From Tubulanus polymorphus (Eukaryota; Animalia; Nemertea), in NCBI RefSeq assembly GCF_964204645.1, contig NC_134033.1:640131-704130 (forward strand): a DNA stretch of 64,000 bases. Direction: 5' to 3'. Below are positions 5,566 through 62,347 of this stretch, in pieces; the first letter of the stretch is position 1; each line of letters opens with the position of its first letter. Below the pieces are notes generated by a model. It searched no databases. It had not been told where the DNA came from and was given only the letters and a program-made list of their open reading frames with translations. Position numbers and translations under genes: made by a program.

Positions 5566-5808
5566 TTAAAGAAGCTCTTCTCGGGGATCACCATCAACTG
5601 CATACTGATATTCACGCAGGTATTTATCTGTGGCGTGTTCGGCTTGCGATACTTGTCTGGTCCTCCTGCGTCGAGGAAGTCTCGGAGTGTCGATAACTTC
5701 GGCATGTTCTTCTATAACCGGAGGTCTATTGGCGATAGTGGCGCCATCGACGTCGTCCCATAGAGGAAAACCAAGCACAGTTAGCAGAAGAGACATCGCG
5801 AGCATCAT
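5566..5808 (-). CDS. Putative small secreted prepro-peptide (80 aa)
   Basis: Hydrophobic N-terminus MMLAMSLLLTVLG and polybasic RLPRRRRTR site. A splice acceptor lies just upstream of the ATG (~5817), a donor at ~5954-5958 and a TATA box (tatataaaa on minus) at ~6013-6021. This matches the 5'-UTR-exon layout of the neighbouring genes. Confidence 0.55.
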   Translation of the reverse strand: MMLAMSLLLTVLGFPLWDDVDGATIANRPPVIEEHAEVIDTPRLPRRRRTRQVSQAEHATDKYLREYQYAVDGDPREELL

Positions 5809-6888
5809 TTTAATTTCTACAACCGATTATTAAAAAAGCCTGGTTGATAAGAAATATATTCCAGTAATATCAACCCGATTGATTAACAATTCCCACAAAA
5901 GATGGTTGAACAATCCGATGATCTCAATGATTCAATCAATTTACTCTTAATGTTACCTCTTATCTTCATGAACATCAGAAATCCTGCGTGCGTCATGTTT
6001 CCGGCGTCTTCTATTTTATATACACGTACAGTAAATGAATGTTTAATACTGCAGCTGGCCATTAAACTACCATTACACAAAAGAAAAGTATCGAAACAGA
6101 GACACGAATCGCTTGAGTACAAAACAGTTCCAGCGACTGGGACAAGGGAAATAACAATATGGCAGTGCTAAACTAATTTAACTAATTTACAAACTGGACC
6201 GCGATACCTTTTACCAATTCGCCAACAATTTCTACTGTGTCAAGTTGTTCGCATCAGAATCACTTTCCTTTACCAACTAGGCCAAGATGCCCCTGTACAA
6301 ATAACCTCAGAACCCATTTCAACTCTGTGCCAAAATGTGCAGCACCTATTTGCCAACAACAGGGCAACATTGTCCATGTCCATTGGCTAACAATCCTTTC
6401 CAGCGAATGAACAGGGCCAACCACAGATAGAGAAGTCAACAAAAACGAAACGAAAGATGAATTCCGAAAGGAAAACTTTTATCGTTCGTTATATCAGTGT
6501 GGGATTCTCTTTATACCGTTGTTGACGTCACACAATATACGGACGTATCACCTACGGTTAACGAGGTTAACTAACCCGGAGGTAGATAGTTTCCCATTAT
6601 TGTTATTGCAGGCGAATCAAGAATAACTAACGCACAAAGCCTTCATTTTTGTAACCCTTATAGCACTTTTATTTTTTTTCAATGAAATCTGTCTGAGTCT
6701 TACATTCAATTATACCAGTACTGGAACGACTGTCGTTATGACGTCGTCATCAGTCTGTAACCATCAGATACCTTCGTTCTTCCTGGAAAAAGAATATGGA
6801 TAACGTAATGAACGCCATCGCTGAAGACGAAGCGCGCTCGATTATTTCAGAATAGTTGTTTAAGAAAATTACCGAAGTTGGAATATGT

Positions 6889-6931
6889 CTATTTATCATC
6901 CGTGTAAGTATCTGCAGGTTCTGGTTCTGGT

Positions 6932-6969
<38 letters not shown>

Positions 6970-8717
6970 GTCATCATCTTCACCATCGTCTGACCTTCCA
7001 ATGCCACCATAGTAGCCATCACCACCATCTTCAACAACGATGTAACTATCGTCGTATTCACCGGCCTCGCTACCGTAGCCATCTTCATAATGGATTTCAA
7101 CATCTCCGGCTTCATAGCCGTAGCCGTTGTCATAGTAAGCTTCCTCCTCTTCATAATCATCATCATCATAATGGATTTCAACGTCATCATAACCAGCTTC
7201 ATGGCCATAACCGTTGTCATAATAAGACTCTTCCTCTTCGTGGCCATAGTAAGACTCTTCCTCTCCATAGCCATAGTAAGCTTCTGCCTCTCCATAGCCA
7301 GCTCCATAACCATAACCATCATCGTAATGGATTTCAACGTCACCGTAACCGGATTCATAGCCATAACCGTTGTCATAGTAAGTTTCCTCCTCATCATAAC
7401 CATAGTAGGCTTCATCCTCATCGTAGACAACGGTATTGTCGTAATTATAGTAGTTGTCTCCGTATCCACCAGCGCTTCTACCATATCCAGCTCCGTAGCC
7501 ATAGCCATTATCGTAGTAAGACTCTTCTTCTCCGTAATACGGCTCAGCGGCGTAGTAAGCCTCTTCCTCTCCATATCCATAACCATAGCCATTGTCATAG
7601 TAAGCCTCTTCTTCGCCATAACCATAACCATTGTCATAGTAAGCCTCTTCTTCGCCATATCCATAACCATAACCATTGTCATAGTAAGCCTCTTCTTCGC
7701 CATAACCATAACCGTAGCCATTGTCATAGTAAGCCTCTTCTTCGCCATAACCATAACCATTGTCATAGTAAGCCTCTTCTTCGCCATAACCATAACCATT
7801 GTCATAGTAAGCCTCTTCTTCGCCATATCCATAACCATAACCATTGTCATAGTAAGCCTCTTCTTCGCCATATCCATAACCATAACCATTGTCATAGTAA
7901 GCCTCTTCTTCGCCATAACCATAACCGTAGCCATTGTCATAGTAAGCCTCTTCTTCGCCATATCCATAACCATTGTCATAGTAAGCTTCTTCTTCGCCAT
8001 AACCATAACCATTGTCATAGTAAGACTCTTCTTCTCCGTAGCCACCTGCACTCCTACCGTACACTACTTCAGAACCATAGCCAGCTTCGTAACCATAGCC
8101 ATCATCATAGTAAGCCTCTTCCTCTCCATAATATCCTCCTCCGTGGCCTCCGTAATAGCCTCCATCTTCGTAGTAACCACCCCCATGACCTCCATAGTGC
8201 CCATGTCCATGACCTCCATAGTGCCCATGTCCATGACCTCCATAGTGCCCATGTCCATGACCTCCATAGCGCCCGTATCCGCGGTCATATTCCTCGTGGC
8301 CGTATCCAGATTCCTCACCGTAACCGCCATCAGCACCATATCCAACCTCGTCACTGTATCCTGAATCATCGCTGTATTCGGATTCAGCAGGTGCACTGTA
8401 TCCAGTATCAGCAGGTCCACTGTAACTAGATTCAGTAGCTGGTGCCGCCGGCGCTACTGGTGCCTGATCGTACGTGGCCGATTCTAAGTAACCAGAATCT
8501 TCTCCATAATAGAAACTACGCCCTTCAACTGCTGGGGCCTCGGTAACAGGTTCAACCGTCGGCTCTGTGTAATACATTAAATATCATGTCATTTAGAATT
8601 CATCGTGTGTATGTTGTGATCATATTGATATTTTCGATCAAAGTTTCATTCGTACTTACCATCATCAACGGCCATACAGCACCCAGCCAACAAGGCAAGA
8701 AGCAGTAACTTCCACAT
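6889..8717 (-). CDS. Secreted Tyr/Gly/Glu-rich repetitive protein (~577 aa)
   Basis: Signal exon 8660-8717 (MWKLLLLALLAGCCMAVDD, gtaag donor) splices in phase to exon 6889-8564. Contains YGGHGHGH repeats, about a dozen GEEEAYYDNGYGY(GY) repeats and an (EP)n tail. Upstream UTR donor at ~8855 and TATA at ~8965-8973. Confidence 0.88.
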
Positions 8718-9967
8718 AACTACACATTTATATGAAAAAACAAAAGCAAACATGTTATATCCTGATTAAAACTACTTTGCCAACTATTTGACGGTTCTCT
8801 TTTAAGTTTCTTATAAACTAGGGAATCAGTAATGAAAAAGTAATGAACTTTTATTACCTTTTTTGTTTTCACTTCTTTGAGTTAAAAACGAGATTCCTCG
8901 ACGGCTGAAATCAACAGCCTTGTGCGGTCAATAATAATGGCGCCGAAACACAGTCGACCGAACCCTTTTATAGTCTAGAGTCCGGATAACCATAGATTTA
9001 CTGGCAGACCACGTGTTGAAATTTATGATATTCAAGGCCCAACTTTCATTGTCCGCTCACGTCAGATACATAGGTGATAAACTTCGTTAGGGACATTCGA
9101 AAAATCTGTGCCTCTTGGCGAAGTTACCATAACGGCGAGATTTATGCCGTCTTCTTACGACATTTCGTTCTGAAGGTCGCACAGCTTGCGTCAGGGGTCA
9201 GCATTCCGGATGATTCTAAAATCGAACCACACGAACGAAGAAGGAGCGATCGATATTACAGGGAAACATGTTACCGTTTCTGCGCTTACTATAATAGATG
9301 GTTTTTCGTGTGTTACTTGCGAATAAAACGTAAAATCGTATCACCTCTCATTTGTAAACGTTTGAGACAAATAGCACTTCGAAGGTCACCTAGATTTGCG
9401 TGAAGTACAAGCTTTCGTTACGCAGTTCTATCACTGGTTCACCTGTGAAGCTACTTTAGGCATCAGTAGCACTTTGAAAAGATCTAGCGGTACTTTCTAG
9501 GTACTACTTGTATTCACGTTTATCTACTCGACATCTGGTTATCATGGCTTCGCTGCAATTTTTCTCATTTATAATACCACCATTTGCTATGATTTTCCAC
9601 ACGTTTCGATTCAGTTTCCTATAAAACGTTTTTTCTTCAGTTCATCTTTTTTATATCACGGAAAATGACGTTCTGCTAAACTGCACGTCATGTTTTCCGC
9701 GTCATGTTTATAAAACGTATCTTCAATTGACCGTGAAAACTATGCGAAAGTTAACTAACTAACTTTATTTGTCGCGTTACATGAACAGATAAATCAGAAT
9801 TCTTCTCTAATTTCGAATCTCAAGTTCCAGTCTGCCTCAATTAATATATAGCTTTTGGTTTGAAAAATCCCCCTCTCGGTAATAATAACAGTTCACTTGT
9901 AAATTGCTGATAATACGTAGGGCCTGAAGTGTATTGTCAGTGAATTGAGAATAATCGACTCAAGATT

Positions 9968-11790: not shown

Positions 11791-13231
11791 GCGTGGGTTT
11801 AACTAAAACGTCATTTCTGATGATGCAATAACACGAAAATAGAAATCCACCTCACCCTCCAGAAAAAATGACCGCCTTCCTGCATTTTGTTTTCGTATGT
11901 GATTAAATTGACGAACCTTAACAAACACAAATAGGTTAATATGTAAATTCCATCCATGACGTCATAGGGAGATTCTGTGATGACGGCCATTTTGTCTGTA
12001 TTCATGTATTCAAGAGCTAGCGGAAACGTGTTTAGATTCAGTACCGCAGACGAACAGCTCTATTCTATAACGAGTAGGTTGAAGTTTTTCATATGTCACC
12101 TGCATCAGTTCAACTTCGATGGATACGTTTTCGCGAAAGACAATAACAGCTGAACAATGGCCGCCGCCGCCGCCGCCGGTACTGGGCAGCAATTGTAGAT
12201 GATATTTATTCACCCACTCGTGCAAAAATTATTAATTACTTTTACGCAGTTATATAAAGCGCACCGCTTGAATTCTTTATTAGCAATAGAATCCACATTA
12301 AAACCCACTCCGGAATACGGTAAGCTATCGGATATTTTTCGAAAAATTATACATGATTTTCGATTTTTACCAAAAAAGCCGTTTTCTATTAACTTCTATT
12401 TCTAGCTGCGGATGCTAAATTTTAGACACTATATGCAATTAGATATTTTTTGATTCTGTTAAAAAAGTTAAAATTCTAAACCTAACTCAACTTGAAAATC
12501 TCTATCACGTCTTTCCGAAAACAATTTTTTAATTTCTTTTAGATTATTCAAGCAATATAAACTGAATCAAGAAAGAGATTTATGGATTATAAATTTTGGC
12601 CGATATATGTTGACACATGTAACCATCTTTACTTTAATCCTCAATGAAATATTGATATATCATTTCTTGGGACGAAATCTTAAGTCACTAATCTATTTAT
12701 TTTTCTATAATATGTTTCGACCAAAATAAACTATAAAGATTATAATGCAACCTCAGTAAACTAACGGAGGATAGATATCTGTTAGCTCTGGAAGATCGGT
12801 AATTTGGTTAAAGATAACCGGCGGGTCAATACCGTGATAACAATCAACTTTTAATAGTCAGTACTCTCCACCGGTTAACTCTAATCAACTTTTGAGCGCA
12901 TGGCCCTGTGGTCAATTGGATCTTTGTTTGCGCAAACAGGTTCATATTGACCTGAAAAGAACCGAACTTGAAATCGGTGTTAATTCCGATTCAGATAAGT
13001 TTTTTACGAATGTACTTATTCCGATAATGAAAAGTCTTTATTGTCAATAGTAAACAAAACGCATTTTGGATCGAATTTTATATCAACATAAAAATATTTA
13101 TGTCGGGCAGCCAAAACATGTCAAACATATTTTTTGTGTATACATACATGTAAATAGAAGAAAAATGATCTAAAATGTTCACTTAGGTTTTTTATTCACG
13201 ATTTCTTTTCTCTGCAGTGGATTGAAAGAAG

Positions 13232-15296
13232 ATGAAGTTAGCGTTGATATTGTTAGGATTGCTAGCAGTAGCGTACGCCCCCGCGCCACCGCGACACGAG
13301 GAAGTACCCGAACACGTGATCGATTCGATTAAAGAGGAAGTGATATCACCTCATCACGAGGAGGTGCACGAGGATAAACCGGAATACATTGAAGATCACG
13401 GTAAAGGTGACGACGATGTTGTCATTGTAGTCGAAGGAAAATGTAAGTCATTAGTATAAATGATGATGTTTTAATTATGTCAAACTTAAAATAATCAATT
13501 GTCTATGTTATGCGGTAGACTTCGCATTACTCGAAAATGGATTCTCTCCGGAGTTAGGATCGGTCGTTAAAGCGAGTGAAATGATGAATATATTTCATGC
13601 TTAAGGAATTCATATCTGATTGAAATTACAAGCATGCATTGAACACCAATGTATTGGGGTGGTTTGTGCATTTTGAATGGTGTAAGTGCTAAGTTCTAAT
13701 AGATAGCCTGATCTGGCTGGAGGATAGCTTACTCTGGGGATAGCTTACTCTGGGGATAGCTTACTCTGGGGATAGCTTACTCTGGGGATAGCCTGCTCTG
13801 TGGGATAGCCAACTCTGGGGAAGAGCCTAGTACTCTGGGGAAGAGCCTAGTACTCTGGGGAAGAGCCTAGTACTCTGGGGAGGAGCCTAGTACTCTGGGG
13901 AAGAGCCTAGTACTCTGGGGAAGAGCCTGCTCTGGGGGATACCTGCTCTGGGGGATACCTGCTCTGGGGGATACCTGCTCTGGGGGATACCTGCTCTGGG
14001 GGATAGCCTAGTACTCTGGGGGATAGCCTACTCTAGGGGATAGTCTGGTCGAATTTTCACTGTAACCCCATCTTGGTCAGGTACACAGCCTCTTAAAGAC
14101 TTATTTGTAATTGCATATGAATTTCGTACTAGTGTCGGCCATTAACTCTGTCGTAGTAAAAACTACTTCGTTATTGCAAGATATGAGATAAATAGAATGT
14201 AATATTTTCTCTCGCTTCAGCCGGCGGCGGAGAAGAAGTCATAACCGTCATCGAAGAGCCACATTACAGCGAAGAGGAACTCGTGGTCGTCTATGAACCG
14301 CCAGAGGGTAAATCATCAGGACCTCCGGTATACGCCGATCTTTACGGAGATTACTACGATGACGATGGAGCTGATTGTGGATACAGCTATCCACATTACC
14401 ACTTACCGCCTCAGCTTCCACCACCGCCTCCACCTAAACCTATCGTCTACGACTACCCGGCCTACAATGGTATGTGTGACTATGGAGATTATTACTATGA
14501 CGATATTATCATTGTTGAGGAATTCGGACACGGTGAAGAGGTAAGATGGATGCATTATTTCAAAATCCATTTAAAATTGGTCCTGGGAAATTGGTCCTGG
14601 ACTCCAAAAAAAGATGGCTACATCTATGTTACCACTACATGACATCATTAATTGCTTTTCTGGATCTATAATCTATAAAACCTTTTAATGCCCCAGACCT
14701 AAATTACCTTGGTATCTACTTTGTTGTAGTTTTCGCCACAATTTGACATATTCTGATTGTGAGCATATTTTGATGTTTTTAGGAGTAATTGAACTCCTTA
14801 GAGAGTAGTGACTACACTAGTCGGGTCTGATGACTGTAACCATAAAATTCCCGCATGCCATCATTAAATGCTTTCCATTTGAGCTGTAGACTTCTAAAAG
14901 GATTCTTCCAAAAATCGGCTGCCTCCGTCAAAATACTTCTATGAGGGAGGATGAGTGTGATCATTGGTCGATGGCAATGATAATTCTATACACTGACATC
15001 AATTTACACTTTTCCAGGGTGTCGTCTACAAAGATGATATCGGCCGTTCCGATGACGGCATCAAGAAGGACGAAGAACCAGTTGTCGACGAGGCTTTCGA
15101 GGAGAACGAATCGGTCGGAAATCCCAAACCGCACGACGAAGTAATCGAAGACGCCATTGCCGAGAACGAGGAAACGAAATCGTTCGAAAAGCCATTGATC
15201 GCCGAAGCTTTGGAAATCAACGAAGACAAAAAGTACCCGAAACATCCGCATGAGGTCGCTGAAGAGGTCGTCGACTATAACGAAAAAGGACATTAA
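13232..15296 (+). CDS. Secreted acidic Glu/Asp/Tyr/His/Pro-rich protein (~269 aa), three coding exons
   Basis: Exons 13232-13442 (signal MKLALILLGLLAVAYA), 14221-14540 (YADLYGDYYDDDGADCGY, poly-Pro, MCDYGDYYYDD) and 15018-15296 (GVVYKDDIGRSDDG...DYNEKGH*), with compatible phases. Candidate TATA at ~12252 and UTR donor at ~12320. Confidence 0.8.
13720..14043. repeat. Intronic G-rich minisatellite (15-20 bp units)
   Basis: ggggatagcttactct / ggggaagagcctagtactct / gggggatacctgctct arrays. Confidence 0.9.
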
Positions 15297-15860
15297 ACAA
15301 ATGGCAAGAATCATTTATAAATCATCCAGAAAATATGGTAGCCTGCTCAAATTCCCCTTTGGCATCTGGCATTAAGTTTTGCAAGTTGCTTTTCAATCCT
15401 CAACTCCAAATCCTACAGTTTTGGGTTTATCATTTTTCAGAGGATCTTAAATCTATGTTTTAAAGCATCACTTCACACTTTACTCGGATATTTACATTAG
15501 AAATGTTCGACGTGTAAATGAAATGTTTGTTGATTCTATTTCCAGTGCTGCAACGGTTGCTTCCAAAGACGCAAAAAATCGGACAACGTCCTAAACGACG
15601 ATTTGTACTCGAAGAAGTCTCTTGTAAATTGTTATTAGAAATAGAAATGAAAAAATCGGAAATATTTTTAGTTTTCTTTCATATTGTTTTAGAACATCCT
15701 ATAACGTCCTTGTTATGATTAACTGTCCTGGTGGGCCTCACTTAGAGCTTCTGTTGTGACGTTTTGCTGTTCACATATGATAAGAAAAGCATAAAAAATT
15801 AATTTTAAGCAATGATCGAACATTATTTTATTCCACATGAAAGGATGACACGCGATTCAT

Positions 15861-16351
15861 CTAAAGAGCAGGAGTAGCAGCCTCCTTTTGGTAAGCCTCA
15901 TCATCAGCTGGTCCATATTGGTCTGTAACGAAGATCGTATCACCGTTTGCCAGATCAATGACATCAGAATTTCCCTTACGATAACGATCAACGATTTTCT
16001 CGCCTTCTAAATCAGCTTCTAAAGTGCCTGGTTTTGGTCGTCCGTAACTTAGTCTTCTGCGGGGTGGAGACGGATTAGTTTGTATAAACCACCAGCCCAG
16101 AATCCATAATCCCCGTAGTACCTTCCTCCATAACCTTCGTGACTTCTTACTCCTAAACCTCCACTTCCTCCATATCCTCCCATATCATATCCTTCTCCAT
16201 GACCTCCATAATGCATAGCTTGAACTAAGGAATATCAAATGAATTCTTTCATCGCCTAGTTTTAACAGTGTTATCGTTGATGAAATGATTTCTGTGTAGA
16301 CCTACCGAAGGCGACACTGGTCAAAGCAATCACTACCAATAATGTATTCAT
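15861..16351 (-). pseudogene. Family paralogue A, frameshifted
   Basis: Signal exon 16306-16351 (MNTLLVVIALTSVAF) and exon 3 from 16224. A 1-nt loss in the Arg/Pro linker gives TAA at 16049-16051 before the conserved module, which survives in another frame. The TATA box is also altered (ctatctaaac). Confidence 0.75.
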
Positions 16352-18042
16352 AACTTCTTTTGTCGTCAGTTTGTCTTCCTACAACTACAACAAACAAGAG
16401 CAAATAGTTAAACACTATTATGAAAGAAAACATAAATACAACTGAATTTTGTAAACAATGCAAAGAAAAATGTTGAACTTACTTTCAATTAGGATATTTC
16501 AATCTATCCCTGGTTCTACCCTAAGCTTTCAAACTTAGCTGTATGAACTGTTTGCCATATCGTCCAGAGGAGTTTAGATAGTTATCGTATCATTCTTAAA
16601 TCTTACATAACGTGTCAGTTTTCGTCGGCAACCTGTCAACTCTTAATTTAGTTCGATGGTTGTTTATTCCGAGGAGTGCGACGGAAAAACCTTAATGAAT
16701 ATTTTCACAGGATATATTTGAACCAGTTGTTCACGTGGTACAGATGTTAAATCTAGTTGAATCAAAAATTTTAAAACCTTTTTTTTATCGGATAGAGCTA
16801 AGAATATAGAGCACATAGCCAGTAAACTAGGGTATTTTTTAACATGTCTTCAGAACCACTTGTCCTCTATTGAGATTCCTCAGAATGAAACAAAATAATA
16901 TAGGCATAAATGGACATTTGTTGTATCCACAGAAAGCATATCGACGTTCCTTCGATTGAAACTGTACGTTATTTTTCAAACCGGGCTCGTATAGGCCTAT
17001 AGGGAGAGGTTCTGGGTGTTCAAATGACACTCTTCCAGCTCAGCCACCAAGATGCCGGCCTTAAAGAAATTCTTGCATCGATCTTCAAGGGATTCGCTCA
17101 TTGGTGAAACATTTGTGTTAGTTGTCGTTCAAAATGTCTTTGAAACTGACTTCATTCCAAGCCATTGCGCCGTAAAATGATAATTCAGTAATTTAATTTA
17201 GTAATTTAATTCTTTAATGACCGATAAACGGTAAGTGAATGGGTAATGATATCAATATAATGGAATGCGCCGTTGAAAATTGTATCACAGTGAAATCCCA
17301 GGGGAGAACTCGATCCCAGGACCTCCGATCTACACACCCTTCGGCGTTTGCGCCTGATATAAAGTCCACTTTCGTAAATCAAACCACCACAATGACGGAC
17401 CTGCATCTTTCAATGTTGTTCTGAGCTACTTCTAAATCCCCACGAATTGACGCGAATTGAAACGGTAATTTCCCAAATGTACAGAAAAAAATCCTCGTCA
17501 TTTTTGGCCGCTATATTCAGTATTCGGAATACCAACATAAAAATAGCATATGAAGCCTTCATATCCAAATATGTTTCGCTTTCCATCTTTTTATAGTCAT
17601 CGTGTATGTATTAGATTAGTCAGTTTCTGTCGGCCACTTTTCAACCATTATTTCATAGTTCAATGGTTTCAGAGTTCAATCGAAATGCTAGTTCATGTGT
17701 AACGCGAGTCCTATTCTGTTGAGGTCTCTGTGCAAATTTTTATTAGAAAGAAGAAATGAAAAAATTGGAAATTACTTTGTTTTTTGTATTGTTTTCTTTT
17801 TTAATCCCTAAGATGTCCTTGTTATGGTAAATTGGCTTCTTAGGCGTCACTTTGAACTTCTATTGTCACGTTCTATTATTCACATATAATAAGAAAACTA
17901 AAACAAGATATTCCATGTAAAACGTAAAATGAAATAAACCGTGTAAGCTTTTATTGATCATTAAAATGATCGAGCAACTTTTATTCTACATGAAGGAGGA
18001 AACACGATTCATACAAGAATTACTCATTACCTATTATGAACC

Positions 18043-20790: not shown

Positions 20791-20915
20791 AGCTTCTTTA
20801 ATCGTCAGTTTGTCTATAAAAACCGAAGAGGCAAATCATATGATAAAACCTTTCGCGGTAGAAAACCTTTATAAAACTGAACATTATAAAACAATGAAAA
20901 GAATCGATGTTGAAC

Positions 20916-26767: not shown

Positions 26768-27226
26768 TCATTTTCCCCTTCCATAAACCGCGGAATCGGC
26801 TCGACCATATTGGTCGGTAACGAAGATCGTATCACCGTTTGCCAGATCGATGACATCAGAATTTCCCTTACGATAACGATCAACGATTTTCTCGCCTTCC
26901 AAATCAGCTTCTAAAGTGCCCGGTTTTGGTCGTCCGTAATTTGGTCGTCTGCGTGGAAGGCGACGAACTCCAAGGTATCTTCCTATATAACCTCCGTGAC
27001 CTCTTCCTCTATATCCTCCACCTCCAACATAACGTCCACTATAACCTCCCAAATTATATCCTCCTGCATGAATTCCTGGTCCAGTTTCATACTGCTGTGC
27101 CTGAACTTAAATATAAGAATATTTCAAAGAAATTCCATGAACTTGTTTTAACAGTGATTATGATTTCTGCTGATGCTTACCCAAGGCGACACTGGCCAAC
27201 GCAACCACTACCAATATTATATTCAT
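26768..27226 (-). CDS. Family paralogue H (~127 aa, ends VYGRGK)
   Basis: Exons 27181-27226 and 26768-27105. Confidence 0.85.
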
Positions 27227-28158
27227 AGCTTCTTTAATCGTCAGTTTGTCTATAAAAACCGAAGGAGCAAATTATATGATAAAACCTTTCGCGGTAGAAA
27301 ACCTTTATAAAACTGAACATTATAAAACAATGAAAAGAATCGATGTTGAACTTACCTTTAGTTGGGATATTTCAATCTATCCCTGGTTCTACCCTAAGCT
27401 TTCAAACTTAGCTGTATGAACTGTTTGGTACATTGTCCAGAGAGGTTTATATAGTAAATATACACATCTTAAATCTTACATAACGAGTCAGTTTTCGTCG
27501 GCAACTTGTCGACTCTTAATTTAGTTCGATGGTTGTTTATTCCGAGGACTGCGAAGAGAATTCCGAAGTCTCTATAGATTTCTCGATAAAACCGACAAAA
27601 ACAGGCTTCTCATATGAAACACCACTTTTCAACACAGGAATTATATTTGAAACAGTTGTTCACGTGGTACAGATGTCTCAGTCAGTTGAATTGAAAACTA
27701 AAAACCTTTTTTCGGATATTTTTTCAGATTCTGGAACATGTAGGAAGTAAAACACAAGTTAGCTTTAACTTGTCTTCAAAATTTGATAAATTGCCGAGAA
27801 ACGTGAGTCTGACGTGACACATCTTCAGAATACATGCAAGACTTGTTCGGGCACTACGAAAATCAGAAAATAGAAATAAGAAGATTGGCAATGAATTATA
27901 GCCTCCTTTTCTTTATATCGTGTACGTAGACGTAGACCATTTCCCGACTATAACCAGTTCTCCGTTTGTGCCACGAAGAACTTCTGTTTTGACGTTTTGA
28001 AAAAATAATGCAATATCCTTTTGACATACCAGAATAGATAATAGAAAGTTGGCACAAACGAATCATAATCAGGGATTATTACTTGATTTATTTCATTTCA
28101 CACGAAAGGAAGACACAAGATTTATTGAAGATTCAAGTTTTTCTTTTCTTTATTAACT

Positions 28159-28694
28159 TTATTTTCCACCACCGAATCCAACATAAGCCGTATCATCAGC
28201 TGGTCCATATTGGTCTGTAACGATGATCGTATCACCGTTTGCCAGATCGATGACATCAGAATTTCCCTTACGATAACGATCAACGATTTTCTCGCCTTCT
28301 AAATCAGCTTCTAAAGTGCCCGGTTTTGGTCGTCCGTAACTTGGTCGTCTGCGTGGACGTCGACGAACTGGTCTGTATCCACCACCAGCACTTACTCCAT
28401 AACCTCCATGGTATATTCCTCTATAAACTCCGTGACCTCTTCCTCTGTATCCTCTACCTCCAACATAACGTCCACTATAACCTCCCAAATGATATTCTCC
28501 TGCATTTATCCCTGGTCCGTTTCCATACTCCTGAGCTTAAAATCGAAACAAAACAGGTAAGAAACACGAAAGCCAAACTGCATGTATATCACGTCATCAT
28601 TAGTGATGATGCTGTTATGTGAAGATTGTGATTTCTGTGTAGACCTACCGAAGGCGACACTGGCCAAAGCAACCACTACCAATATTATATTCAT
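28159..28694 (-). CDS. Family paralogue I (~140 aa, ends YVGFGGGK)
   Basis: Exons 28649-28694 and 28159-28535 (AQEYGNGPG...). Confidence 0.85.
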
Positions 28695-30553
28695 AGCTTC
28701 TTTAATCGTCAGTTTGTCTATAAAAACCGAAATGAGTAAATTATGATACGAACTTTCATGGTAGAAAACATTTATAAAACTGAACTTCGTAAAACGATGA
28801 AAAGAATCAATGTTGAACTCACCTTTAATTGGGATATTTCAATCTATCCCAGGTTCTACCCTAAGCTTTCAAACTTAGCTGCAAAAAATGTTTGTCACAT
28901 TGTCCAGGGAAGTTTATATAGTCAATGTATGGATCTTAAATCTAACGTAACTTGTCAGTTTTAGTTGGTAAATTGTCAACTCTTTATTTAGTACGATGGT
29001 TGTTTATTGCGAGCACTGCGATGGGACTCCTGAAGTCTCTATAGATTCATCCATAAAACTGACAAAAACATGCCTCTCATATGTAACATCAGTTTTTAAA
29101 CATACTTACAGGATATTTTGAACAGCTGTTTGCGTTGTAAGTGTGACTGATTCAGTTGAATTAGAAAATAGAAAATCTTATTTTGGAAAGAATTGAGAGG
29201 GCGTGTAGTAGTAAATAGAAGTCAGACATCTAAGATTGCTTTATATGAAGAATAAAACATGTTTTAAAGGTGTGTAAAACATGGAATTCCGCTGTGTCCA
29301 CATAAAACCATGTCGACGTTCCTTTGACTGATACTGCTATCTCTCATGAAACGTTAAGAATCACAATATCCGTGACAAAGACTCGATGAGTAACAAATCC
29401 CACAATGTGTGAACGAATCTAACAAAGAAATAATTTCTTCCTCTTCTATTTTTTGCCAGTCATTTTAGACTAAAGAAGGGTGGTAGCAACCACTCGAAAT
29501 ATTTCTAATTTTTCAATAAACTTTTTAGATTCGTTTTCACAAATTTTTTTTCTCATGCTATCTTTTCATTCTTCGATGTAGTTCTGTGAACTGCTTCAAA
29601 TACTTCAGATGGAACTTTGAATCGATTAAATCTAGTCACTATGATTCAGATCACCAAGATATGAATGACAAGCGTGTAAATATGCCAAAAATCCACTTCG
29701 TTTCTTGGGCAATTTTTTTAGAACATCACCATTAGAAACAGCATGTAGAATATGTTTCGCCTTCTTTAATCGATGTATTTCCTTTGCTCTGTGGATCTTA
29801 CAAAGACATTAAATAACTATTCAACTGATTAAATCCATGTAACCGAGCAAAACGTCAATCAATTTTATTTCATAACACGAAAAACGGACACAAAAATTTC
29901 ATCATCCATTATCAGATTCTTTATTCGTCAGTCACGATATTCAACATCAGTTACATTAGATTTACTTTTACTTCTGGAATGACGGATTCAAGACTGCAAC
30001 AGATGATAGAGAGAGAATCGTGTTAGTCATTTTGTAATATTCGTCTTGAGTATAGTGAAGGCTGGTCAGAAACATGACATTTCTAAAGATAAAGTTGGGC
30101 TCTAGGTTAAACTATGCAATGGTCGCCATTAAAACTACCTACGACACAGTTACATAGCGGGGCGAGGTTGGACAATAGAAGTCACAAAGGGGCATTTTGA
30201 TGTCCGAAAAAGCGTACTCCCGGACTGAGGGACTAGTTTTGAAGAACTTGTCGAGTCTCAAAAGGACTGATGTCCAAAAAGGCCATGTTAAGCGTACTCC
30301 CGCTTTGAAAGGAACAAACTTCTTTTTTGACAATATGAAAAGGGGCACTCACTGGATCCACCCCTGTGTTTTATCAACAAAAACATCATCAACATGATAT
30401 CCTTGGAAATAAAGTTAGGCCTTAGGTAGATCTATGCAATGATCTCTATCTAAACTAACTATGATACAGTTACATACCATCAATTTATCCACGATGATAA
30501 TACAATTTAGATATATATATAATGATTAATTTACCGTTTATCGAAAATCCAGT

Positions 30554-31746
30554 TTATCCTGTCTCCTGGTCGACATATATCACACCGTCACCGTCATCTT
30601 CCTTATCGTCATCTTCATCAACATCATCATCGTCATCATCACCATCAGATCGCCCCATACCATAATACCCATCCTCTTCATAATAACCGTCCTCTTCATA
30701 ATATACCTCATCGACCTCGTATGTCTCCTGGTCGACGTAAGTCTCCTGGTCGACGTATGCCTCTTCGTCGACGTATGTCTCCTGGTCGACATATGTCTCC
30801 TGGTCGACATAAGCTGGACCATACGCATCTTCTACGACGATTGTATCACCGTTTGCCAGATCGATGACATCAGAATTTCCCTTACGATAACGTTTAATGA
30901 TTTTCTGGCCTTCCAAATCAGCTTCTAAAGTGCCTGGTTTTGGTTTTGGTCGTCCGTAACTTGGTCGTCTGCGTGGACGACGACGAATTGGTCTGTAGCC
31001 ACCACCTCCTCCAACATGGCCACCTCCACCGCCACCTCCATAACCTCCTCCTCCAACATGGCCACCTCCACCGCCGCCTCCATAACCTCCTCCTCCAACA
31101 TGGCCACCTCCACCGCCGCCTCCATAACCTCCTCCTCCTACATGACCACCTCCTCCATGGCCTCCTCCTCCATAACCTCCACCTCCGACATGACCTCCAC
31201 CATGTCCTCCACCACCACCTCCTCCGTAACCTCCACCATGACCTCTGTGCCCTCCGTGGCTTCCATGACCTCCTGCTATTCCAACGTATCCCCCACCTGG
31301 AGCTGGTCGATCATGACCTCCTCCACCACCGCCATAGCCTCCTACATGTCCTCCATGACCATGACCTCCTGAAGGACCTGGGCCATAACCACCTGGTCCT
31401 GACGGGCCTGGGCCATAATCTCCTGGTCCTGGGCCGTATCCACCTGGTCCCGCTGGGCCTGGGCCATGATCTCCTGGTCCTGCTGGGCCTGGACCATAAT
31501 CTCCTGGTCCTGCTGGGCCTGGTCCATAATCTCCTGGTCCTGCTGGACCTGGCCCATAACCACCCGGTCCTGGCCGATGATCAGCTGGTCCTGGCCCATG
31601 ATCAGCTGGTCCATACTGAGCTGAAAGTTGGAGATAGAAATGTATAAGATGCGGTAAATCAAGTAAATCAGTGTAATTAATGATTTCTGCAGAGACTTAC
31701 CGAAGGCGACACTGGCCAACGCAACCACTACCAATATTACATTCAT
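30554..31746 (-). CDS. Family paralogue J, long form (~370 aa): GPGPAGPGDY repeats, Gly/His block, conserved module, YVDQET repeats, acidic tail
   Basis: Exons 31701-31746 and 30554-31620. Manual translation from 31620 to 31081 is stop-free and in frame with the 30554 stop. The ORF track shows only the part after an internal TTG. Confidence 0.88.
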
Positions 31747-32848
31747 AGCTTTTTGGCGTCTTTACAACCTCCTGAACAAAAAACAGACAATAGTAAACAT
31801 TCAGTAGTTACAAAGCAATAGCTTTACTTTTAATGTGGCTTTGTGAAGTAAATGCAAAGAAATTCGTTTAGCTCACCTCGAATTGGGATATTTCAATCTA
31901 TCCCTGGTTCTACCCTAAGTTTTCAAACTTAGCTGCATAAACTGTTTAGCGTATCGTCCAGACTGGTTTATATAGGCGTCCCTTACGTCAGACTCCAGCT
32001 TTCATTTTATGCAAAAGCAATATTTCTGTCGGCTATTTGTCAACTTTGATGGCATTCAGTTTGGTTCAATTGCTACATTTCGTCGAGGACCGCGAAGGGA
32101 ACTCCAAATTCTATACGAATTGCTCAATAAAATCGTTAATAAAATGCGTCTCGTGTCGAGCGTCGTTTCTTACAAATGTTCTATGGACATTTAAAACACT
32201 TGTTGGTTCGTGTTCTAGTGGTACAGGTGTTATATACTGACGAATTAAAAACTGATATAATGGAATCTTTTTAAAGGAATGCATTAAGAGTTTTTTTCGT
32301 ATCGTTACGTAAGTTTTAGCACAATAAATTACCAATTAGTATTACAATCAGTCGGAATGCTATAGAATATTCTAGCCTTTTGCAGAAATACCATCTATCA
32401 ATTGATTGATTCATATTCTATATAATACCAACTGAGACTCCTCCCAAAGACATTACGTACGAATCTGCATCATTGAGATTGAAAGGGCGTCCATCTTCTA
32501 GAATTTCGAGCAAAACATTAAGCAAACGTAAAACTAAACTTTCCATGTAACTGAGCACATCATTATTCAACTTTATTTCAAACAAAATATTCGTGAATTT
32601 CAGATCTATGTCACCAGTTACATTTGGATTTCCCTTTATCTCTCGGCTGTTTTGAGGATGACGGCTGCGGAACTGGAATAAAAAAGAACAAAGAAAAGAA
32701 AGCTGTTAATCATTTCTTTCATCTAAGCTCATCTAGGTAAAGGACAAGAACATATCACATCAGAAAAAAAAAGATTTCGGCAATAGCGCAATGATCTTGT
32801 GAATTCAATGGACTCGAATCAGTGAAATAATCATCTTACCGTCTAAAC

Positions 32849-34280
32849 CTACTCATCGGCATCGGCATCGGCATCTGCATCATCGGCATCTGCAGCATCG
32901 TCAGTAGCGGCATCATCATCGGCATCATCTGCATCAGCATCATCAGCATCATCTTCCACATCAGCGGATCGACCTATACCCGATGTAGTACCGTAAGTTA
33001 CTTCCTCGTAAACCTCTGCTTCGTAGCTTCCTTCATCGTCATAGTCTCCAACATCGGCACGACCCTGAGCTTCACCGTAACTTTCTGCCTCGTAAATCGC
33101 CTCGGCGTAACTCGCTTCCTCGTAACTTTTTTCGTCCACGTAGTCTCCAACATCGGCACGGCCCTGAGCCGCTGCTGCCGCTGCTGCCGCCGCCGCAGCT
33201 GCCTGCTCTTCCTCGTATTCTGCCTTTTCGTAATCTTCTTCGGTATCGTACTCTTCAACATCGGCACGTCCAGCGACCTCTTCAGGGACCTCATAATTAT
33301 CATTGTCATCATCATCACCCTCTCCATAGGCGTCCTTTATGACAACCTTTCCACCGTCATCCAGATCCAGTATTTCATCATCTCCCTTACGGTCCTTTTT
33401 AACTACTTTCTTGCCTTTCAATCCTCTTTTTAATTGAGCTTTACTTGGTCTTGGATGTCCGTGAATTGGTGGTCTGTGAAGAATTGGTCCGTATCCAAAG
33501 CCTCCTCCTCCACCACCGCCTCCATAACCTCCTCCTACGAAATGACCTACACCATGTCCTCCTCCATAACCTTCTCCACCACCTCCTCCATAACCTCCTC
33601 CGCCTCCTCCTCCATAACCTCCTCCACCACCGCCTGCGAAATGACCTACACCATGTCCTCCTCCATAACCTTCTCCACCACCTCCTCCATAACCTCCTCC
33701 GCCTCCTCCTCCATAACCTCCTCCGCCGCCTCCTCCATAACCTCCTCCGTGACTCATATGACCTCCTCCATAACCTTCTCCGCCACCTCCTCCATAACCT
33801 CCTCCATAACCTCCTCCATGATCAAAATGACCTCCTCCATAACCTTCTCCGCCACCTCCTCCATAACCTCCTCCATGATCAAAATGACCTCCACCATGGC
33901 CCATATGGGCATCTGGTCCGTAACCTCCAGCTCCGTGATGGTCCATATGGTCCATATGCCCACCTGGTCCATATCCGCCATCTCCTAAGTGGCCCATGTG
34001 GTCATCTGGTCCGTAACCATGGTCCATATAGCCTCCTGGACCATCTCCTAAATGGCCTCCAGGTCCGTCCATATATCCTCCGCCATGGTCTGGACCTGGG
34101 CCATAAGGACCGTAGTCCATATCAGGACCACCATAACCTTGTGCTGAAAATCAAATAACGAAACGTAAGAAGTTCGTTAACGAAAAACATGTCATGTTAT
34201 TTTGATGATGATTATGATTTCTGCTGATGCTTACCCAAGGCGACACTGGCCAACGCAATTGCTACCAATATTATATTCAT
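32849..34280 (-). CDS. Family paralogue K, divergent long form (~446 aa): His/Met/Gly block, GGGGY repeats, divergent Lys-rich module, poly-Ala, GRADV repeats, (DA)n tail
   Basis: Exons 34235-34280 (MNIILVAIALASVAL) and 32849-34143. Module variant LKGKKVVKKDRKGDDEILDLDDGGKVVIKDAYG. Confidence 0.88.
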
Positions 34281-37051
34281 AGCTTCTTTTGTCGTCAGTT
34301 TGTCTATAAAACAAAAGCAAATAATATTTAAAACCTTTCATGGGTGAATACGTTCATACAACTAATAATTCATGCTGAACATTGTAAAACAATGGGGGGG
34401 GGGGGAATAATGAAGAACTCACCTTCAATTGGGATATTTCAATCTATCCCTGGTTCTACCCTAAGCTTTCAAACTTAGCTGCATAAACTGTTTGGCACAC
34501 TGTCCAGGGCGGTTTATATAGTAATCACTTGCGACAGACCTGCATCTTTTTTAATTCAAGAAGTCATTTTTCTGTCGGGCGTTTGACAACTTTGATGGGA
34601 ATAAATAAGATTTTGATGGTTATTTTTTTCGAGGGCTGCCAAGGAATTTCAAAGTCTGTCTCGATGTTTTGATGAAAGCGAATTGTATACTTTCCCCTTA
34701 ACGTGTGCCTCATTACGAGCATCCTATTTTTTTCTTATTTTCCCTTTGTCGGTACATATAACACACTTGCGGCTGTGTTTGTTCAAAGTACCATGCTGGC
34801 GACCAGGTGTTTTATACTGTTTAGACATTTAAAAAAACAAACATGTATCTACCACTTTCTTGCAATTGTGAAATTATTATTTGAAAGGTACCATGAACTT
34901 ATCATCCAATCATCTTTAGCAACTCGTGGCTTTTGTTGTTTTAATGGTCACATTTGAATAAATCTCTATCTAAAATACATGTTGTTTATAACGCCACATT
35001 TGGTTGTAATGGAAACGTATAAGGATTGTTGCATACGACGATGAGTTTTCGATAGTGTGCGCAAAATGGCAGGACTTCGTGAAGTGCATCAGAACGTTTC
35101 CAAATGTGTACACGAAAATAACGAAGACACTGAACTGACCAGGTACATGATGCTTAATGTATCTGAACAATGAAATAGTTTTGGACCGCCGTCATTTACA
35201 AACGGTTTCATCCTAAAATGCAGTTCTTCAGTTTATCCACAACTTTTTTTATATACGTCATGTAGTTTTGTTTCAAGGAAAATTTTACAATTAGTTATTT
35301 TGCTAAGGTCAAAGTTGACATTAATAGCAAAGTTCCACCACTCCCGGCAACCGCCAAGTAAAAGCTTAGTCCTAGATTACGTAATGCTTTTATCTTCCGA
35401 TTTCCCACCAAATTCCGCAATCCACCTCACAATTTTCTGAACAAATCTCATAATAATAGTTCATTTTCATTCCATTGTCCGCCGTCAAATATATTTAAAA
35501 TATGTAGTTACGAAGAACAAATTTACTTATTAGTCTGGGAGCAATCCAATCGAGTGGGAAATGATTGTTAGAGCAAGACACCTTCAAGTATTAGAAAAAT
35601 CTTTGACCCAAATTTTCGACTGTTGTCCTGTTGCTATAACGACGGTTTTCTCGGCAACAATTGGTAACTCTGATACTCAGCCTATGAAATCGGTCCCAGG
35701 ACTACCAGGTACTTACTCTAATCAGAGTATAATTGATGATAATAAAACAGACATGTCACAGAAGGCAAACAAATACAACGGCTCACGTGAACAGCTTAAT
35801 AATAGAGGAAATATGTTTCGAGGTAATGTCTGACGTTTTGAGTTAATGTCTGGTGTATTGAAGGAAAATGAAAATTTCTAATTCACTCATCCGTGACCCA
35901 TGATTATCCGCCTTAATTGCGGAGGTCCTGATATTGCGGCACATAAACCACGGGAGTTGACAGTTTTGTATGACAGGACATTAAAGCTCAGATAAAAAGT
36001 GCGTGTATTCATGACACGTGTTGTTGTTCGGAATGTTACTGGTTACAGCTGGTTTATATTGCTGTCGAACACGTCACGCATTAGTCACGTCCCAGTCACG
36101 TGTTATGGCTGTAGATAAAAACCGATGAACAGTGAGTATGTTCGGAGAAACTTTGTCAAGTGGTCAGCGGTTAAGGTTTTTGTTCGTAAGCGATATGCCA
36201 TTTATTTTAACATTGTTTTTCCTCTATGGCTCAATGTCAGATTGAGTTGCTGAAATGGTGTTGGGCATCATATTGCGCTAGAGACGAGGAAGACATCAAT
36301 GAGTAGAACGTTACAGCTTCGTGTTACAGCTAACCTCATTATACGGCAAAATCTCGTTGAAGGTGATATTTGGGCGTTTAGGTATCATGCTAAAATACAT
36401 TTCATCTGAAGAATACGTTTGATTATAATCGGCGTGTCGTAGTAATAGATGTTGGGTTACATGTAGAAGCGGCTGGTGAACTAGGGACGCGCGGATCTGT
36501 AGACACGATGCAACTTCTGCACCATCGACCTAGTACACGCTGGTCTTATTCTGTAAACCCCAATTTCAGCTCATTGCAACTTTTGTAGATTCCTCCGCAC
36601 AACACTTTCCATCGCGCCACAAACATAGTAAGCCGCGCAATTAATGGGTTTCTGGTGGTACATTTTTATGCAGGAATACAACGATTTTCTCCCTTTACTC
36701 AAGTGTGACAAGAAGACCTAAACAAAACGTATGACGTCACCGAGCAACTAATGCGTTTACTTTTATTTCATAAAAAAGAATGAGGACACAGATTCGATAT
36801 CGACATCCGGCATTAGTTACGTTGCCTCTTTCAATTTCGTCTTTGAAATTTCCTTTGGTGAGGTAGTAGTTGAAATGATGTACCGCGAAGCTACAAAAAA
36901 ATAAGAACAGAATACAATATAATTTATTCGAGAAACTAGAATCTGATTATAGAACTAGAAGGATAGCCTTTAACAATGCAAATATGAGTAATATCATTAG
37001 TAAATGGAAATTGGAAAAATGACTTTCGGTATATATAAAAGATGGATGGGT

Positions 37052-37171
37052 TGGTTGCTCAAAAGTTAGCAGAAGTTAACTTTGCTAACTTCACCAATTC
37101 ATCCACTACATACCAGTAGACATATTACTAATTAAAATGAGGTAAACTTGAAACTGACTTTTCAGCAACTG
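37052..37171. mobile_element. MITE-like element (gttgctcaaaagtt TIR family) in the 3'-UTR intron of paralogue L
   Basis: ggttgctcaaaagttag ... ctgacttttcagcaactg. Related to 42530-42643. Confidence 0.5.
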
Positions 37172-37269
37172 CAACCGCGGGTCTTTCCATGTCTTGCGAT
37201 TAAAGAAATGAGAATTTTGATTTTTATTCGTGCGTCAAATTATGGATAACAAGTATAACACCTTACCAT

Positions 37270-38517
37270 TTATTCATACTCATCATCGTCATCTTCCTCA
37301 TCGTCGTATGAATCTTCCTCGACGACTGTAACTGTTTCTCCGTCATCGGAACGTCCGCCATAATAGCTTTCCTCCATTCCGTAAGACTCTTCATCGTCGT
37401 AATAGGTCTCCTCGTCGACATAGTCCTCGTAATCTTCGTAATCCTCATAATCTTCTCGATCTTCGTAATCCTCATAATCCTCATAATCTTCATGATCTTC
37501 GTAATCTTCATGATCTTCGTAATCTTCATAATCTTCGTAATCCTCATAATCTTCATGATCTTCGTAATCCTCATAATCCTCATAATCTTCGTAATCCTCG
37601 TCATAACTATCAGCTGGACCATACGCATCTTCTACAATGATCGTGTCACCGTTTGCCAGATCGATGACATCAGAATTTCCCTTACGATAACGATCAACGA
37701 TTTTCTCGCCTTCTAAATCAGCTTCTAAAGTGCCTGGTTTTGGTTTTGGTCGTCCGTAACTTGGTCGTCTGCGTGGACGACGACGAATTGGTCTGTAGCC
37801 ACCACCTCCTCCAACATTGCCTCCTCCACCACCTCCTCCAGCATGGCCTCCTCCATAACCTCCACCTCCTACATGACCACCTCCATGTCCTCCATGACCT
37901 CTTGGTACACCAACATATCCTCCAACTGGACCGGGGCCTTGGGGACCTGGGCCATAAGGTCCAGGACCTGCTGGGCCTGGGCCATAACCTCCTGGACCAC
38001 CTGGTCCAACTGGACCTGGGCCATAATCACCTGGTCCAACTGGACCTGGGCCATAATCACCTGGTCCTACGGGACCTGGTCCATAATCACCTGGTCCTGG
38101 GCCGTATCCTCCTGGACCACTTGGCCCTGCTGGGCCTGGGCCATAACCACCTGGACCACCTGGTCCTACTGGGCCTGGTCCATAATCACCTGGTCCTGGA
38201 CCAATAGGACCTGGTCCATAAGGTCCAGGTCCACTTGGACCTGGACCATAATCACCTGGGCCAGGGCCAATGGGACCTGGACCGTATCCTCCTGGACCAC
38301 CGATAGGTCCATGGCCACCGGGACCTGGACCATATTCAGCGGGGCCTGGGCCCATGGCCATAGGACCTGGTCCTGGTCCATACTGAGCTGAAAGTTAGAG
38401 AAAGATATGTTGATTAAGATGCGTTGAACCAAGATTAATCAGTGTCCTTAATGATTTCTGCAGAGACTTACCGAAGGCGACACCGGCCAACGCAACTACG
38501 ACCAATAATATATTCAT
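37270..38517 (-). CDS. Family paralogue L, long form (~387 aa): silk-like GPGxY repeats, conserved module, (EDY)n acidic tail
   Basis: Exons 38472-38517 (MNILLVVVALAGVAF) and 37270-38387. Confidence 0.88.
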
Positions 38518-39554
38518 AACTTCTTTTGTCGTCTCAAGGACCTGAAGAAAATAAACATTCATTATAGATCAAACAACTCGGGCACAGTTAGTCAGCTGAA
38601 TACCTGGTATAACAATGAAGTTAAATTATCAGCCGGTTTTCTTCAACCAACTTCTGAGTAACTGCAGCTACAGACTCTTTGTTTAAAAAAAAATCAATGA
38701 AAATAATGACTCACCTTTAGATGGGATATTTCAATCTATCCCTGGTGCTCTACCCTAAGTTTTCAAACCTAGCTGTGTGAACTGTTTGTCACATTGTCCA
38801 GAGAGGTTTATATAGTCACTAGTAACATCGTACATCTTTCATTTACGTAGGCAATCATTAGTTTATTTGACCACTTGTCATTTTTAATGGCTTCCAGTTC
38901 ACTCGGAGGGTCATCCATTTTTTTTCGAGGCTAACGAAGGAATTCTGATTTTCTTTTCGGAAATATCAATTTCGATCGGTGGAAATCGATTCTGCGCGCG
39001 TCCCAATGTGAGCATCGTATTTTTATATCCTATCGCTACATTTAGAACACTTGTCGATACCGATTCATGGGACGCAGGTGTCCGCGAGTGTCGCCATAAA
39101 AATAACCTGCACGTCCGGAAATTCCTTGAATTATCGCAATGTTTAGAAAACCATTGAGAGTAAACAGTTCGTTGAAGGTTGATGCAATCAATTCATAAAA
39201 CTGCGCCCACTCATGGGGTGGTGACGCGGGCTTCGTTGAAATCAAGGACACATTTATCAATTACATTCATGCTTTATGTTTCGGGTGATTTGACTTAACT
39301 CTTTCATAGGCCTACACATTTGGTGGGTATTTTAGGTGAAATTGGAAACAGAGAAATCACGATTAACTTACTGTTAGTATCTAAAAGGGTAACACAGGGC
39401 TCATATTGTAAAAGATAATCTTTTGATTTGCAGTTAAACATCATGCTTAAGTCGTGCACGAATGTGACAGTCGTTTCTCTACGAATTTTTCACTTGCAGA
39501 CAAGAAAAGTCTTGCTGCCTATTCTGCATCAATTCAATATCAAGGAAATCAACA

Positions 39555-62313: not shown

Positions 62314-62347
<34 letters not shown>

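What the first reader, a model, noticed from the sequence alone, without database searches (positions are those of the whole stretch)
5566..38900. A ~33 kb cluster of secreted low-complexity proteins resembling an undescribed biomaterial kit (tube, cement, cocoon or mucus)
Seen: 15 signal-peptide genes or pseudogenes side by side (a 12-member family plus 3 other genes). They are built from Gly/Tyr blocks, His/Gly blocks, GPGxY repeats, polybasic Arg linkers and Asp/Glu/Tyr tails, and none has an enzyme domain I recognise. Known: sandcastle-worm cement, squid-beak HBPs, polychaete jaw proteins and mussel foot proteins use oppositely charged, Tyr/His/Gly-rich sequences for coacervation and DOPA or metal cross-linking. 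Inference: short forms with Arg-rich N-halves and long forms with strongly acidic tails are co-secreted parts of one self-assembling material.
Basis: partly seen in the sequence, partly recalled or inferred. Interest (0 to 1): 0.9.

Follow-up and report, generated by a model that had tools for sequence, protein, structure and literature searches.

The report
Ribbon-worm secreted charged-protein gene cluster
A tube-secreting ribbon worm carries a block of 14 mostly unannotated genes for secreted, glycine/tyrosine-rich, strongly charged proteins that share a gene layout and an apparent cut site, so they probably build one gland-made material such as its tube, though no expression or protein data show this yet.

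Summary
Confirmed with corrections. The window is from Tubulanus polymorphus (ribbon worm). It holds a 12-member tandem family (3 long acidic, 7 short basic, 2 frameshifted) and two further very acidic secreted genes (G_YE, G_plus). The 15th gene (80-aa ORF at 5566) is doubtful. RefSeq records only two of the genes I could check; no relative outside this genome was found. New here: (1) a Gly-Arg|Ser/Ala motif accounts for 11 of 15 Arg in the acidic regions of five proteins, across dissimilar genes (shuffle mean 0.25; motif chosen post hoc), and six short forms end in Gly-basic, pointing to shared proteolytic maturation or amidation; (2) long forms and G_YE share a four-exon layout; (3) all 12 paralogues keep a 67-nt 5' exon folding into two hairpins; (4) a 38-aa predicted beta-meander core, weakly like bacterial RTX repeats (noise level). 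Simple short-plus-long coacervation is weak: net +42 against -366. Best reading: a co-regulated structural secretion, probably tube or sheath (about 0.55). Rival: short forms are glycine-rich antimicrobials. No RNA run exists. The scan noted similar clusters elsewhere in this genome.

The parts
37270..38812 (-). F1, long acidic member (387 aa; GPGxY block, Gly block, Arg linker, core 37618-37731, DYE tail, GR|S site at 37356-37348); predicted 3'UTR intron donor at 37266
32849..34518 (-). F2, divergent long acidic member (446 aa; His/Gly/Asp block, core 33323-33436, four GR|A/S sites, Asp/Ala tail); 3'UTR intron donor at 32839
30554..31972 (-). F3, long acidic member (370 aa; GPG and Gly/His blocks, core 30818-30931, GR|S site at 30655-30647); 3'UTR intron donor at 30534
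28159..28918 (-). F4, short basic member (140 aa, pI 9.6, ends Gly-Lys)
26768..27451 (-). F5, short basic member (127 aa, ends Gly-Arg-Gly-Lys)
25696..26389 (-). F6, short basic member (130 aa) = RefSeq XP_074658561.1 / LOC141911439
24355..25056 (-). F7, short basic member (133 aa, ends Gly-Arg-Lys)
22987..23715 (-). F8, short basic member (142 aa, ends Gly-Arg-Lys)
21655..22347 (-). F9, short basic member (130 aa; unit 99.3% identical to F6)
20263..21015 (-). F10, short member (150 aa, different C-terminus without Gly-basic end)
18043..18737 (-). F11, short member with a frameshift near 18110 inside the core (RefSeq LOC141911415 models it as 135 aa from an upstream ATG)
15860..16579 (-). F12, short member with a frameshift near 16065 before the core and an altered TATA box; probable pseudogene
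6889..8972 (-). G_YE, 577-aa Gly/Tyr/Glu repeat protein (net -147, four GR|S sites, no core); same four-exon layout as the long members (3'UTR intron donor at 6872)
12731..15296 (+). G_plus, 269-aa Glu/Asp/Pro/Tyr secreted protein; coding exons 13232-13442, 14221-14540, 15018-15296; GR|SDDG site at 15042-15050; putative TATA at 12731 and noncoding exon with GGATAGAT at 12769
34423..34489 (-). Example (F2) of the conserved noncoding exon 1, present in all 12 members, predicted to fold into two cap-proximal hairpins with UUGAAA-type loops
5566..5808 (-).

Best explanation
A lineage-specific gene cluster for co-regulated gland proteins that are matured by single-Arg cleavage and assembled into an extracellular structural secretion, most likely the epidermal tube or sheath of Tubulanus. 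Inferred steps: (1) the paralogues are switched on together from a shared promoter and 5' exon; (2) the precursors enter secretory granules, kept soluble by Asp/Glu tails and probably sulfated Tyr; (3) a convertase or trypsin-like protease cuts at Gly-Arg|Ser/Ala, shedding acidic end-pieces, and the exposed Gly and the Gly-basic ends of short forms may become amides; (4) on release into seawater the polyanions set with Ca/Mg and with the Arg-rich blocks, while Gly/Pro/Tyr blocks give elasticity, His blocks bind metal, and the 38-aa beta-meander acts as the shared association module; (5) Tyr in the Gly/Arg blocks may cross-link. Shown: genes, composition, motif enrichment, shared layout, orphan status. 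Not shown: expression, tissue, cleavage, modifications, assembly.
For: [quoted passage not shown] Signal-type N-termini on all members. GR[SA] in 11 of 15 Arg, shuffle mean 0.25, max 4 in 100,000; one each in F2 tail, G_YE and G_plus p = 0.0002; encoded by different codons. Gly-basic ends on F4-F9. Exon 1 identity 0.90 against introns 0.59-0.60. Shared 3'UTR intron in F1, F2, F3, G_YE. Core keeps its sequence between F1 and short forms (5-6 synonymous against 2-3 non-synonymous codon differences). No Cys in any family member and no toxin or enzyme domain. Precedent for protease-activated glue (PMC3040736) and polyion glues (PMC11277488).
Against: No RNA or proteome. Charge imbalance +42 against -366. 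The motif and hairpin were chosen after looking. In L. longissimus larvae, monobasic sites usually have a second basic residue 3-6 positions upstream (PMC8557429), which these sites lack, so the enzyme is uncertain. The genome has many other candidate clusters for the tube. I found no paper stating that T. polymorphus itself builds a tube or what the tube contains. No cross-linking enzyme lies in the window.
Confidence: 0.55

Rival explanations
1. The short forms are glycine-rich cationic antimicrobial peptides of the skin mucus, amplified recently from a structural ancestor, and act apart from the long acidic proteins.
For: The N-halves (Gly/Tyr/Arg, net +10 to +12) resemble armadillidins in composition (PMC7017220). 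Gly-basic C-termini suggest amidation. Recent tandem birth and death (units 96-99% identical, two broken copies).
Against: They keep the same 38-aa core and Arg linker as the acidic long forms and the same 5' exon. Copies are near-identical rather than diversified in the mature region. It does not explain the five acidic proteins.
Confidence: 0.15
2. The proteins build pseudocnidae or the sticky proboscis secretion rather than the tube.
For: Tubulanus has multilayered secretory pseudocnidae (PMC7897414) that are released in adhesive mucus in another palaeonemertean (PMC12846013). Granule maturation by propeptide removal would fit.
Against: Pseudocnidae occur across palaeo- and pilidiophoran nemerteans, yet no relative was found in other species, although low-complexity genes are poorly annotated. 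No Cys for a capsule wall of minicollagen type (own knowledge of nematocysts).
Confidence: 0.12
3. A structural or gel protein set for another product: egg coat or spawn jelly, larval or gut secretion, body-wall matrix.
For: Gly/Tyr-rich tandem clusters with short signal exons are typical of eggshell and cuticle genes (own knowledge). Recent copy amplification fits a burst of demand.
Against: No positive evidence for any such tissue.
Confidence: 0.15
4. The genes are neuropeptide or hormone precursors, with Gly-Arg as amidation sites and acidic spacers.
For: Gly-Arg followed by acidic spacers is a peptide-precursor signature (own knowledge; PMC8557429 for nemertean amidation).
Against: The predicted products are 30-345 aa low-complexity chains with no conserved short C-terminal pharmacophore; no Pfam match.
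Confidence: 0.03

Closest known systems
Sandcastle-worm cement proteins Pc1-Pc5 (Phragmatopoma californica; PMC11277488)
   Same: Secreted low-complexity polybasic and polyacidic proteins, Gly/Tyr/His-rich, in a tube-dwelling worm.
   Different: No sequence homology found. The anions here are Asp/Glu/(sulfo)Tyr, not phosphoserine (Ser 2-4%). The cation is Arg and weak in net terms. Acidic and basic forms are paralogues with a shared folded core. Gly-Arg processing sites.
Barnacle cement curing model (trypsin-like activation; PMC3040736) and fibrinogen-type acidic peptide release
   Same: Single-Arg cleavage that could remove acidic pieces and trigger assembly.
   Different: Unrelated proteins; cleavage here is only predicted; may be intragranular convertase plus amidation instead.
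Squid-beak HBPs and Nereis/Glycera jaw proteins (own knowledge)
   Same: Gly/His blocks in F2, F3 and G_YE.
   Different: His is only 2-6% of mature chains; nemerteans of this group have no jaw; no chitin-binding domain found.
Flagelliform silk / GPGxx elastomers (own knowledge)
   Same: GPG-based repeats in F1 and F3.
   Different: Short blocks of about 100-150 aa, no spidroin terminal domains; convergent composition.
Armadillidins and other glycine-rich antimicrobial peptides (PMC7017220)
   Same: Cationic Gly/Tyr/Arg composition of the short forms' N-halves; signal peptide; possible amidation.
   Different: Short forms are 110-135 aa with an acidic folded core; no GGGF repeat; activity untested.
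Bacterial RTX-associated repeats HCBP_related (PF06594) / BapA_N (PF22783)
   Same: A 20-residue beta-hairpin stretch of the core aligns to these repeats.
   Different: Per-repeat scores 5-15 bits, Pfam E about 0.001-0.02, equal to a spurious Scm3 hit, below cut-off; fold searches give no RTX match.
Other secreted Gly-rich clusters noted in this genome (s1-500189, s1-500267, s1-503447, s1-503652)
   Same: Orphan, tandem, secreted, low-complexity genes proposed as biomaterial parts.
   Different: Not compared directly; the 38-aa core found no other representative.

Membership tests
Sabellariid cement (Pc1-Pc5) type | Sequence homology to Pc proteins | tested here: not met
   No relative outside this genome (word and length limits apply).
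Sabellariid cement (Pc1-Pc5) type | Poly-phosphoserine polyanion | tested here: not met
   Ser 2-4% in all acidic proteins.
Sabellariid cement (Pc1-Pc5) type | Oppositely charged secreted proteins encoded | tested here: met
   pI 4.1-4.6 against 9.2-9.8, but unbalanced.
Sabellariid cement (Pc1-Pc5) type | Co-packaging in gland granules; DOPA and catechol-oxidase curing | not testable with these tools
   No RNA run; no protein data.
Glycine-rich antimicrobial peptides (armadillidin type) | Signal peptide plus cationic Gly-rich chain | tested here: met
   Short forms Gly 21-24%, pI above 9.
Glycine-rich antimicrobial peptides (armadillidin type) | About 50-aa mature peptide, about 50% Gly, GGGF-type repeats | tested here: not met
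Glycine-rich antimicrobial peptides (armadillidin type) | Antimicrobial activity | not testable with these tools
   Needs a bench assay.
BapA_N / HCBP_related domain | Pfam score above gathering cut-off over the domain | tested here: not met
   15-19 bits against cut-off 27; 36 of 123 positions; no HCBP_related hit.
BapA_N / HCBP_related domain | Matching fold | tested here: inconclusive
   Model pLDDT 66, helix plus three strands; best Z 3.2, no RTX protein. hhalign 95.5% is circular because the bacterial rows were picked by the match.
Neuropeptide precursor | Short repeated peptides between basic sites with a conserved C-terminal motif | tested here: not met
   Predicted products 19-345 aa, low-complexity.
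Nemertean cysteine-rich toxins and cytolysins | Disulfide scaffold or pore-forming domain | tested here: not met
   No Cys in mature family members, 1% in G_plus; no Pfam toxin hit.
Known Rfam cis-element (5' exon hairpins) | Rfam match | tested here: not met
   No match at exon 1 even at E up to 10.

The most novel reading that the evidence does not exclude
This is the tube-building kit of tubulanid ribbon worms, working in a way not described for worm tubes: paralogous polyanion and polycation forms share one small beta-meander docking module, are matured by one Gly-Arg protease or amidation step across dissimilar genes, use sulfotyrosine as the main anion, and are co-ordinated by a 5'UTR double hairpin. 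In the most extreme form the module was borrowed from a bacterial RTX adhesin repeat (about 0.1 on its own).
Probability: 0.15. Interest if true: 0.8.

Novelty: new variant of a known kind. Interest (0 to 1): 0.5.

Why it matters
I found no paper on the composition of nemertean tubes or pseudocnidae in the library searched. This cluster supplies named, mostly unannotated candidate genes and sharp predictions: neo-termini at Gly-Arg, amidated ends, sulfated Tyr, shared expression. One tube proteome and one tissue RNA set could test them all. If right, it adds an independently evolved, protease-matured underwater material from a phylum with none described. The worth is tempered because orphan low-complexity secretory clusters are common in invertebrates and this genome has several.

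Tried and rejected
Homologue searches: short form found only its own RefSeq entry; F2 core region none; G_YE none; core profile against 1.84 billion proteins found itself plus seven repeat proteins by summed weak hits; metagenome contigs none; ESM Atlas none for core or the 80-aa ORF. Blanks are limited by query length and annotation gaps. Fold searches gave only generic meanders. Horizontal origin of the core was not accepted: noise-level scores and a circular profile test. Expression: the three runs holding the region cover introns and intergenic DNA and show no GT-AG joint, so they are DNA-like. The hairpins show no two-sided compensatory change, so RNA structure is not proven; DNA-level promoter elements or gene conversion remain possible. 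Furin cleavage in the Arg linker: a strict RX[KR]R site occurs in only 4 of 10 intact members, so it was not adopted. Direction of evolution (short from long) is not resolved; the tree only separates the 9 short from the 3 long members at 80/80 support and has no root. The findings index could not search 'tyrosinase'. External searches were run exon by exon by reference; joined spliced models were used only inside scripts and not searched, except RefSeq's own P0001.
Full report
Source. The window is from the palaeonemertean Tubulanus polymorphus, record OZ123234.1.

Observation. Twelve paralogues lie head to tail on the minus strand between 15860 and 38812. Each has a TATA box, a 67-69 nt noncoding exon, a 46-nt signal exon and one large exon. 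F1-F3 are long and acidic (370-446 aa, net -33 to -68). F4-F10 are short and basic (127-150 aa, net +3 to +8, pI 9.2-9.8). F11 and F12 are frameshifted. F6 equals RefSeq XP_074658561.1; in the 20 kb around it only F6 and F11 are on record, and F2 and G_YE did not even find themselves in the protein collection. Two more acidic secreted genes are G_YE (577 aa, Gly 22%, Tyr 23%, Glu 17%) and G_plus (269 aa, plus strand). The 80-aa ORF at 5566 is doubtful. The count is therefore 14 supported genes, 12 intact.

A folded core. All members share 38 residues after the Arg linker. AlphaFold predicts a short helix and three strands, pLDDT above 80 in the strands, 66 overall. Between F1 and the short forms the core shows 4-6 synonymous and 2-3 non-synonymous codon differences, a sign of constraint on small numbers. 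Its last 20 residues resemble repeats in bacterial RTX calcium-binding proteins and Pfam BapA_N (E 0.001-0.02). A spurious Scm3 hit scores the same, per-repeat scores are 5-15 bits, and fold searches find only generic meanders. I treat this as a lead, probably a convergent beta-hairpin.

A shared processing-type motif. In the acidic regions (tails of F1-F3, all of mature G_YE and G_plus) 11 of 15 Arg lie in Gly-Arg-Ser/Ala. Shuffles give a mean of 0.25 and a maximum of 4; the chance of one site each in F2 tail, G_YE and G_plus is 0.0002. The last site reads GRSDDG in F1, G_YE and G_plus, with different codons, and precedes an acidic end-piece of 26-39 aa (82 aa in G_plus). The motif was chosen after inspection and some sites are internal repeats, but the effect is large. 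F4-F9 end in Gly-Lys, Gly-Arg-Lys or Gly-Arg-Gly-Lys, as note s1-500584 also saw. From established knowledge, X-Gly-basic is the convertase, carboxypeptidase and amidation signal of dense-core granules, and Gly-Arg| is also a trypsin-family site. Nemertean peptides are amidated, but their monobasic sites usually have an upstream basic residue (PMC8557429), absent here. A clotting-like extracellular protease, as modelled for barnacle glue (PMC3040736), is therefore as likely. Cleavage is inferred, not shown.

Shared gene layout and regulation. F1, F2, F3 and G_YE all have a GT donor 3-19 nt after the stop codon and a downstream acceptor and poly(A) signal; short forms lack it. G_YE thus has the long members' four-exon plan and end motif and may be a distant relative without the core. 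Exon 1 is 0.90 identical among divergent members against 0.59-0.60 for introns. It folds into two cap-proximal hairpins (z -2.6 to -3.2), with one-sided changes that keep pairs but no two-sided ones and no Rfam match. The 8-mer GGATAGAT occurs 13 times in the window: once in each exon 1 and once 38 nt after a TATA upstream of G_plus on its sense strand (chance mean 2.5 per window). A hairpin with the same UUGAAA loop lies at 12968, the only plus-strand one. These are post hoc and tentative. Conserved UTR and signal exons are also common in gland-peptide families, as note s1-487803 reports for this genome.

Charge and tyrosine. Summed net charge is +42 for the seven short forms and -366 for the five acidic proteins. 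Tyr in acidic context: 91 of 128 in G_YE, 24 of 43 in F1, 0-2 in short forms. Tyr in Asp/Glu tracts of secreted proteins is often sulfated (PMC9372746), which would widen the gap. In sandcastle glue, charge balance involves polybasic proteins, phosphoproteins, sulfated polyanions and Mg/Ca (PMC11277488). Here, binary coacervation would need a large excess of short forms; divalent ions or other cationic partners are more likely. The recent amplification of short copies could be a dosage response, which is speculation.

Expression. Three public runs hold the region; on 28150-34149 all cover introns and spacers with no spliced joint, so they are DNA-like. They confirm the locus in a second sample but say nothing on expression.

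Which material. [quoted passage not shown] Tubulanus also makes pseudocnidae (PMC7897414). I found no composition study for either. The short N-halves resemble glycine-rich antimicrobials in composition (PMC7017220). I put a co-secreted structural material of tube or sheath type at 0.55, other matrices 0.15, antimicrobial short forms 0.15, pseudocnidae or proboscis glue 0.12, neuropeptides 0.03.

Novelty. No relative was found outside this genome within the tools' limits, and it is not a member of any named family. It works like the polyion secretions of tube worms and mussels. The scan has noted several comparable clusters in this genome, unchecked by me, so this is one candidate among many. 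The shared Gly-Arg motif, layout and core make it a new variant of a known kind. Interest 0.5.

Noticed in passing
window 19335-19682: Partial duplicate (97% aa over 78 residues) of the last G_plus exon with downstream DNA, carried along in the tandem duplication between F10 and F11.
   Followed up: partly
window 28184 (loose ends): Contigs of the DNA runs carry short-form C-termini not present in this assembly, so further alleles or copies of the family exist.
   Followed up: no
window 12961-12978, + strand: Hairpin with the same UUGAAA loop as the family's exon 1 but a different stem, about 260 nt upstream of the G_plus ATG; may be in intron 1 or the 5'UTR.
   Followed up: partly
window 50537-51676, + strand: Intronless rhodopsin-type GPCR (7tm_1), FMRFamide-receptor-like by eye; annotated gene used to identify the species.
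   Followed up: partly
window from 55071 to about 60800, + strand: Multi-exon gene for a 766-aa AMOP-domain protein, with vWD-like and sushi-like exons by eye.
   Followed up: no
window 5566-5808, - strand: 80-aa ORF with a weak signal peptide and an RRRRTR furin-like site; could be a small unrelated prepro-peptide.
   Followed up: partly
window 62042-62890 and 13717-14047: 849-nt 12-mer purine/pyrimidine microsatellite; 16-20-nt minisatellite inside a G_plus intron.
   Followed up: no
window 9960-10160 and 45977-46263: Two copies of a repeat element with GGTTAGGGTTA-type 23-mers and CACCTGACTGG-type repeats, probably a nonautonomous mobile element.
   Followed up: no
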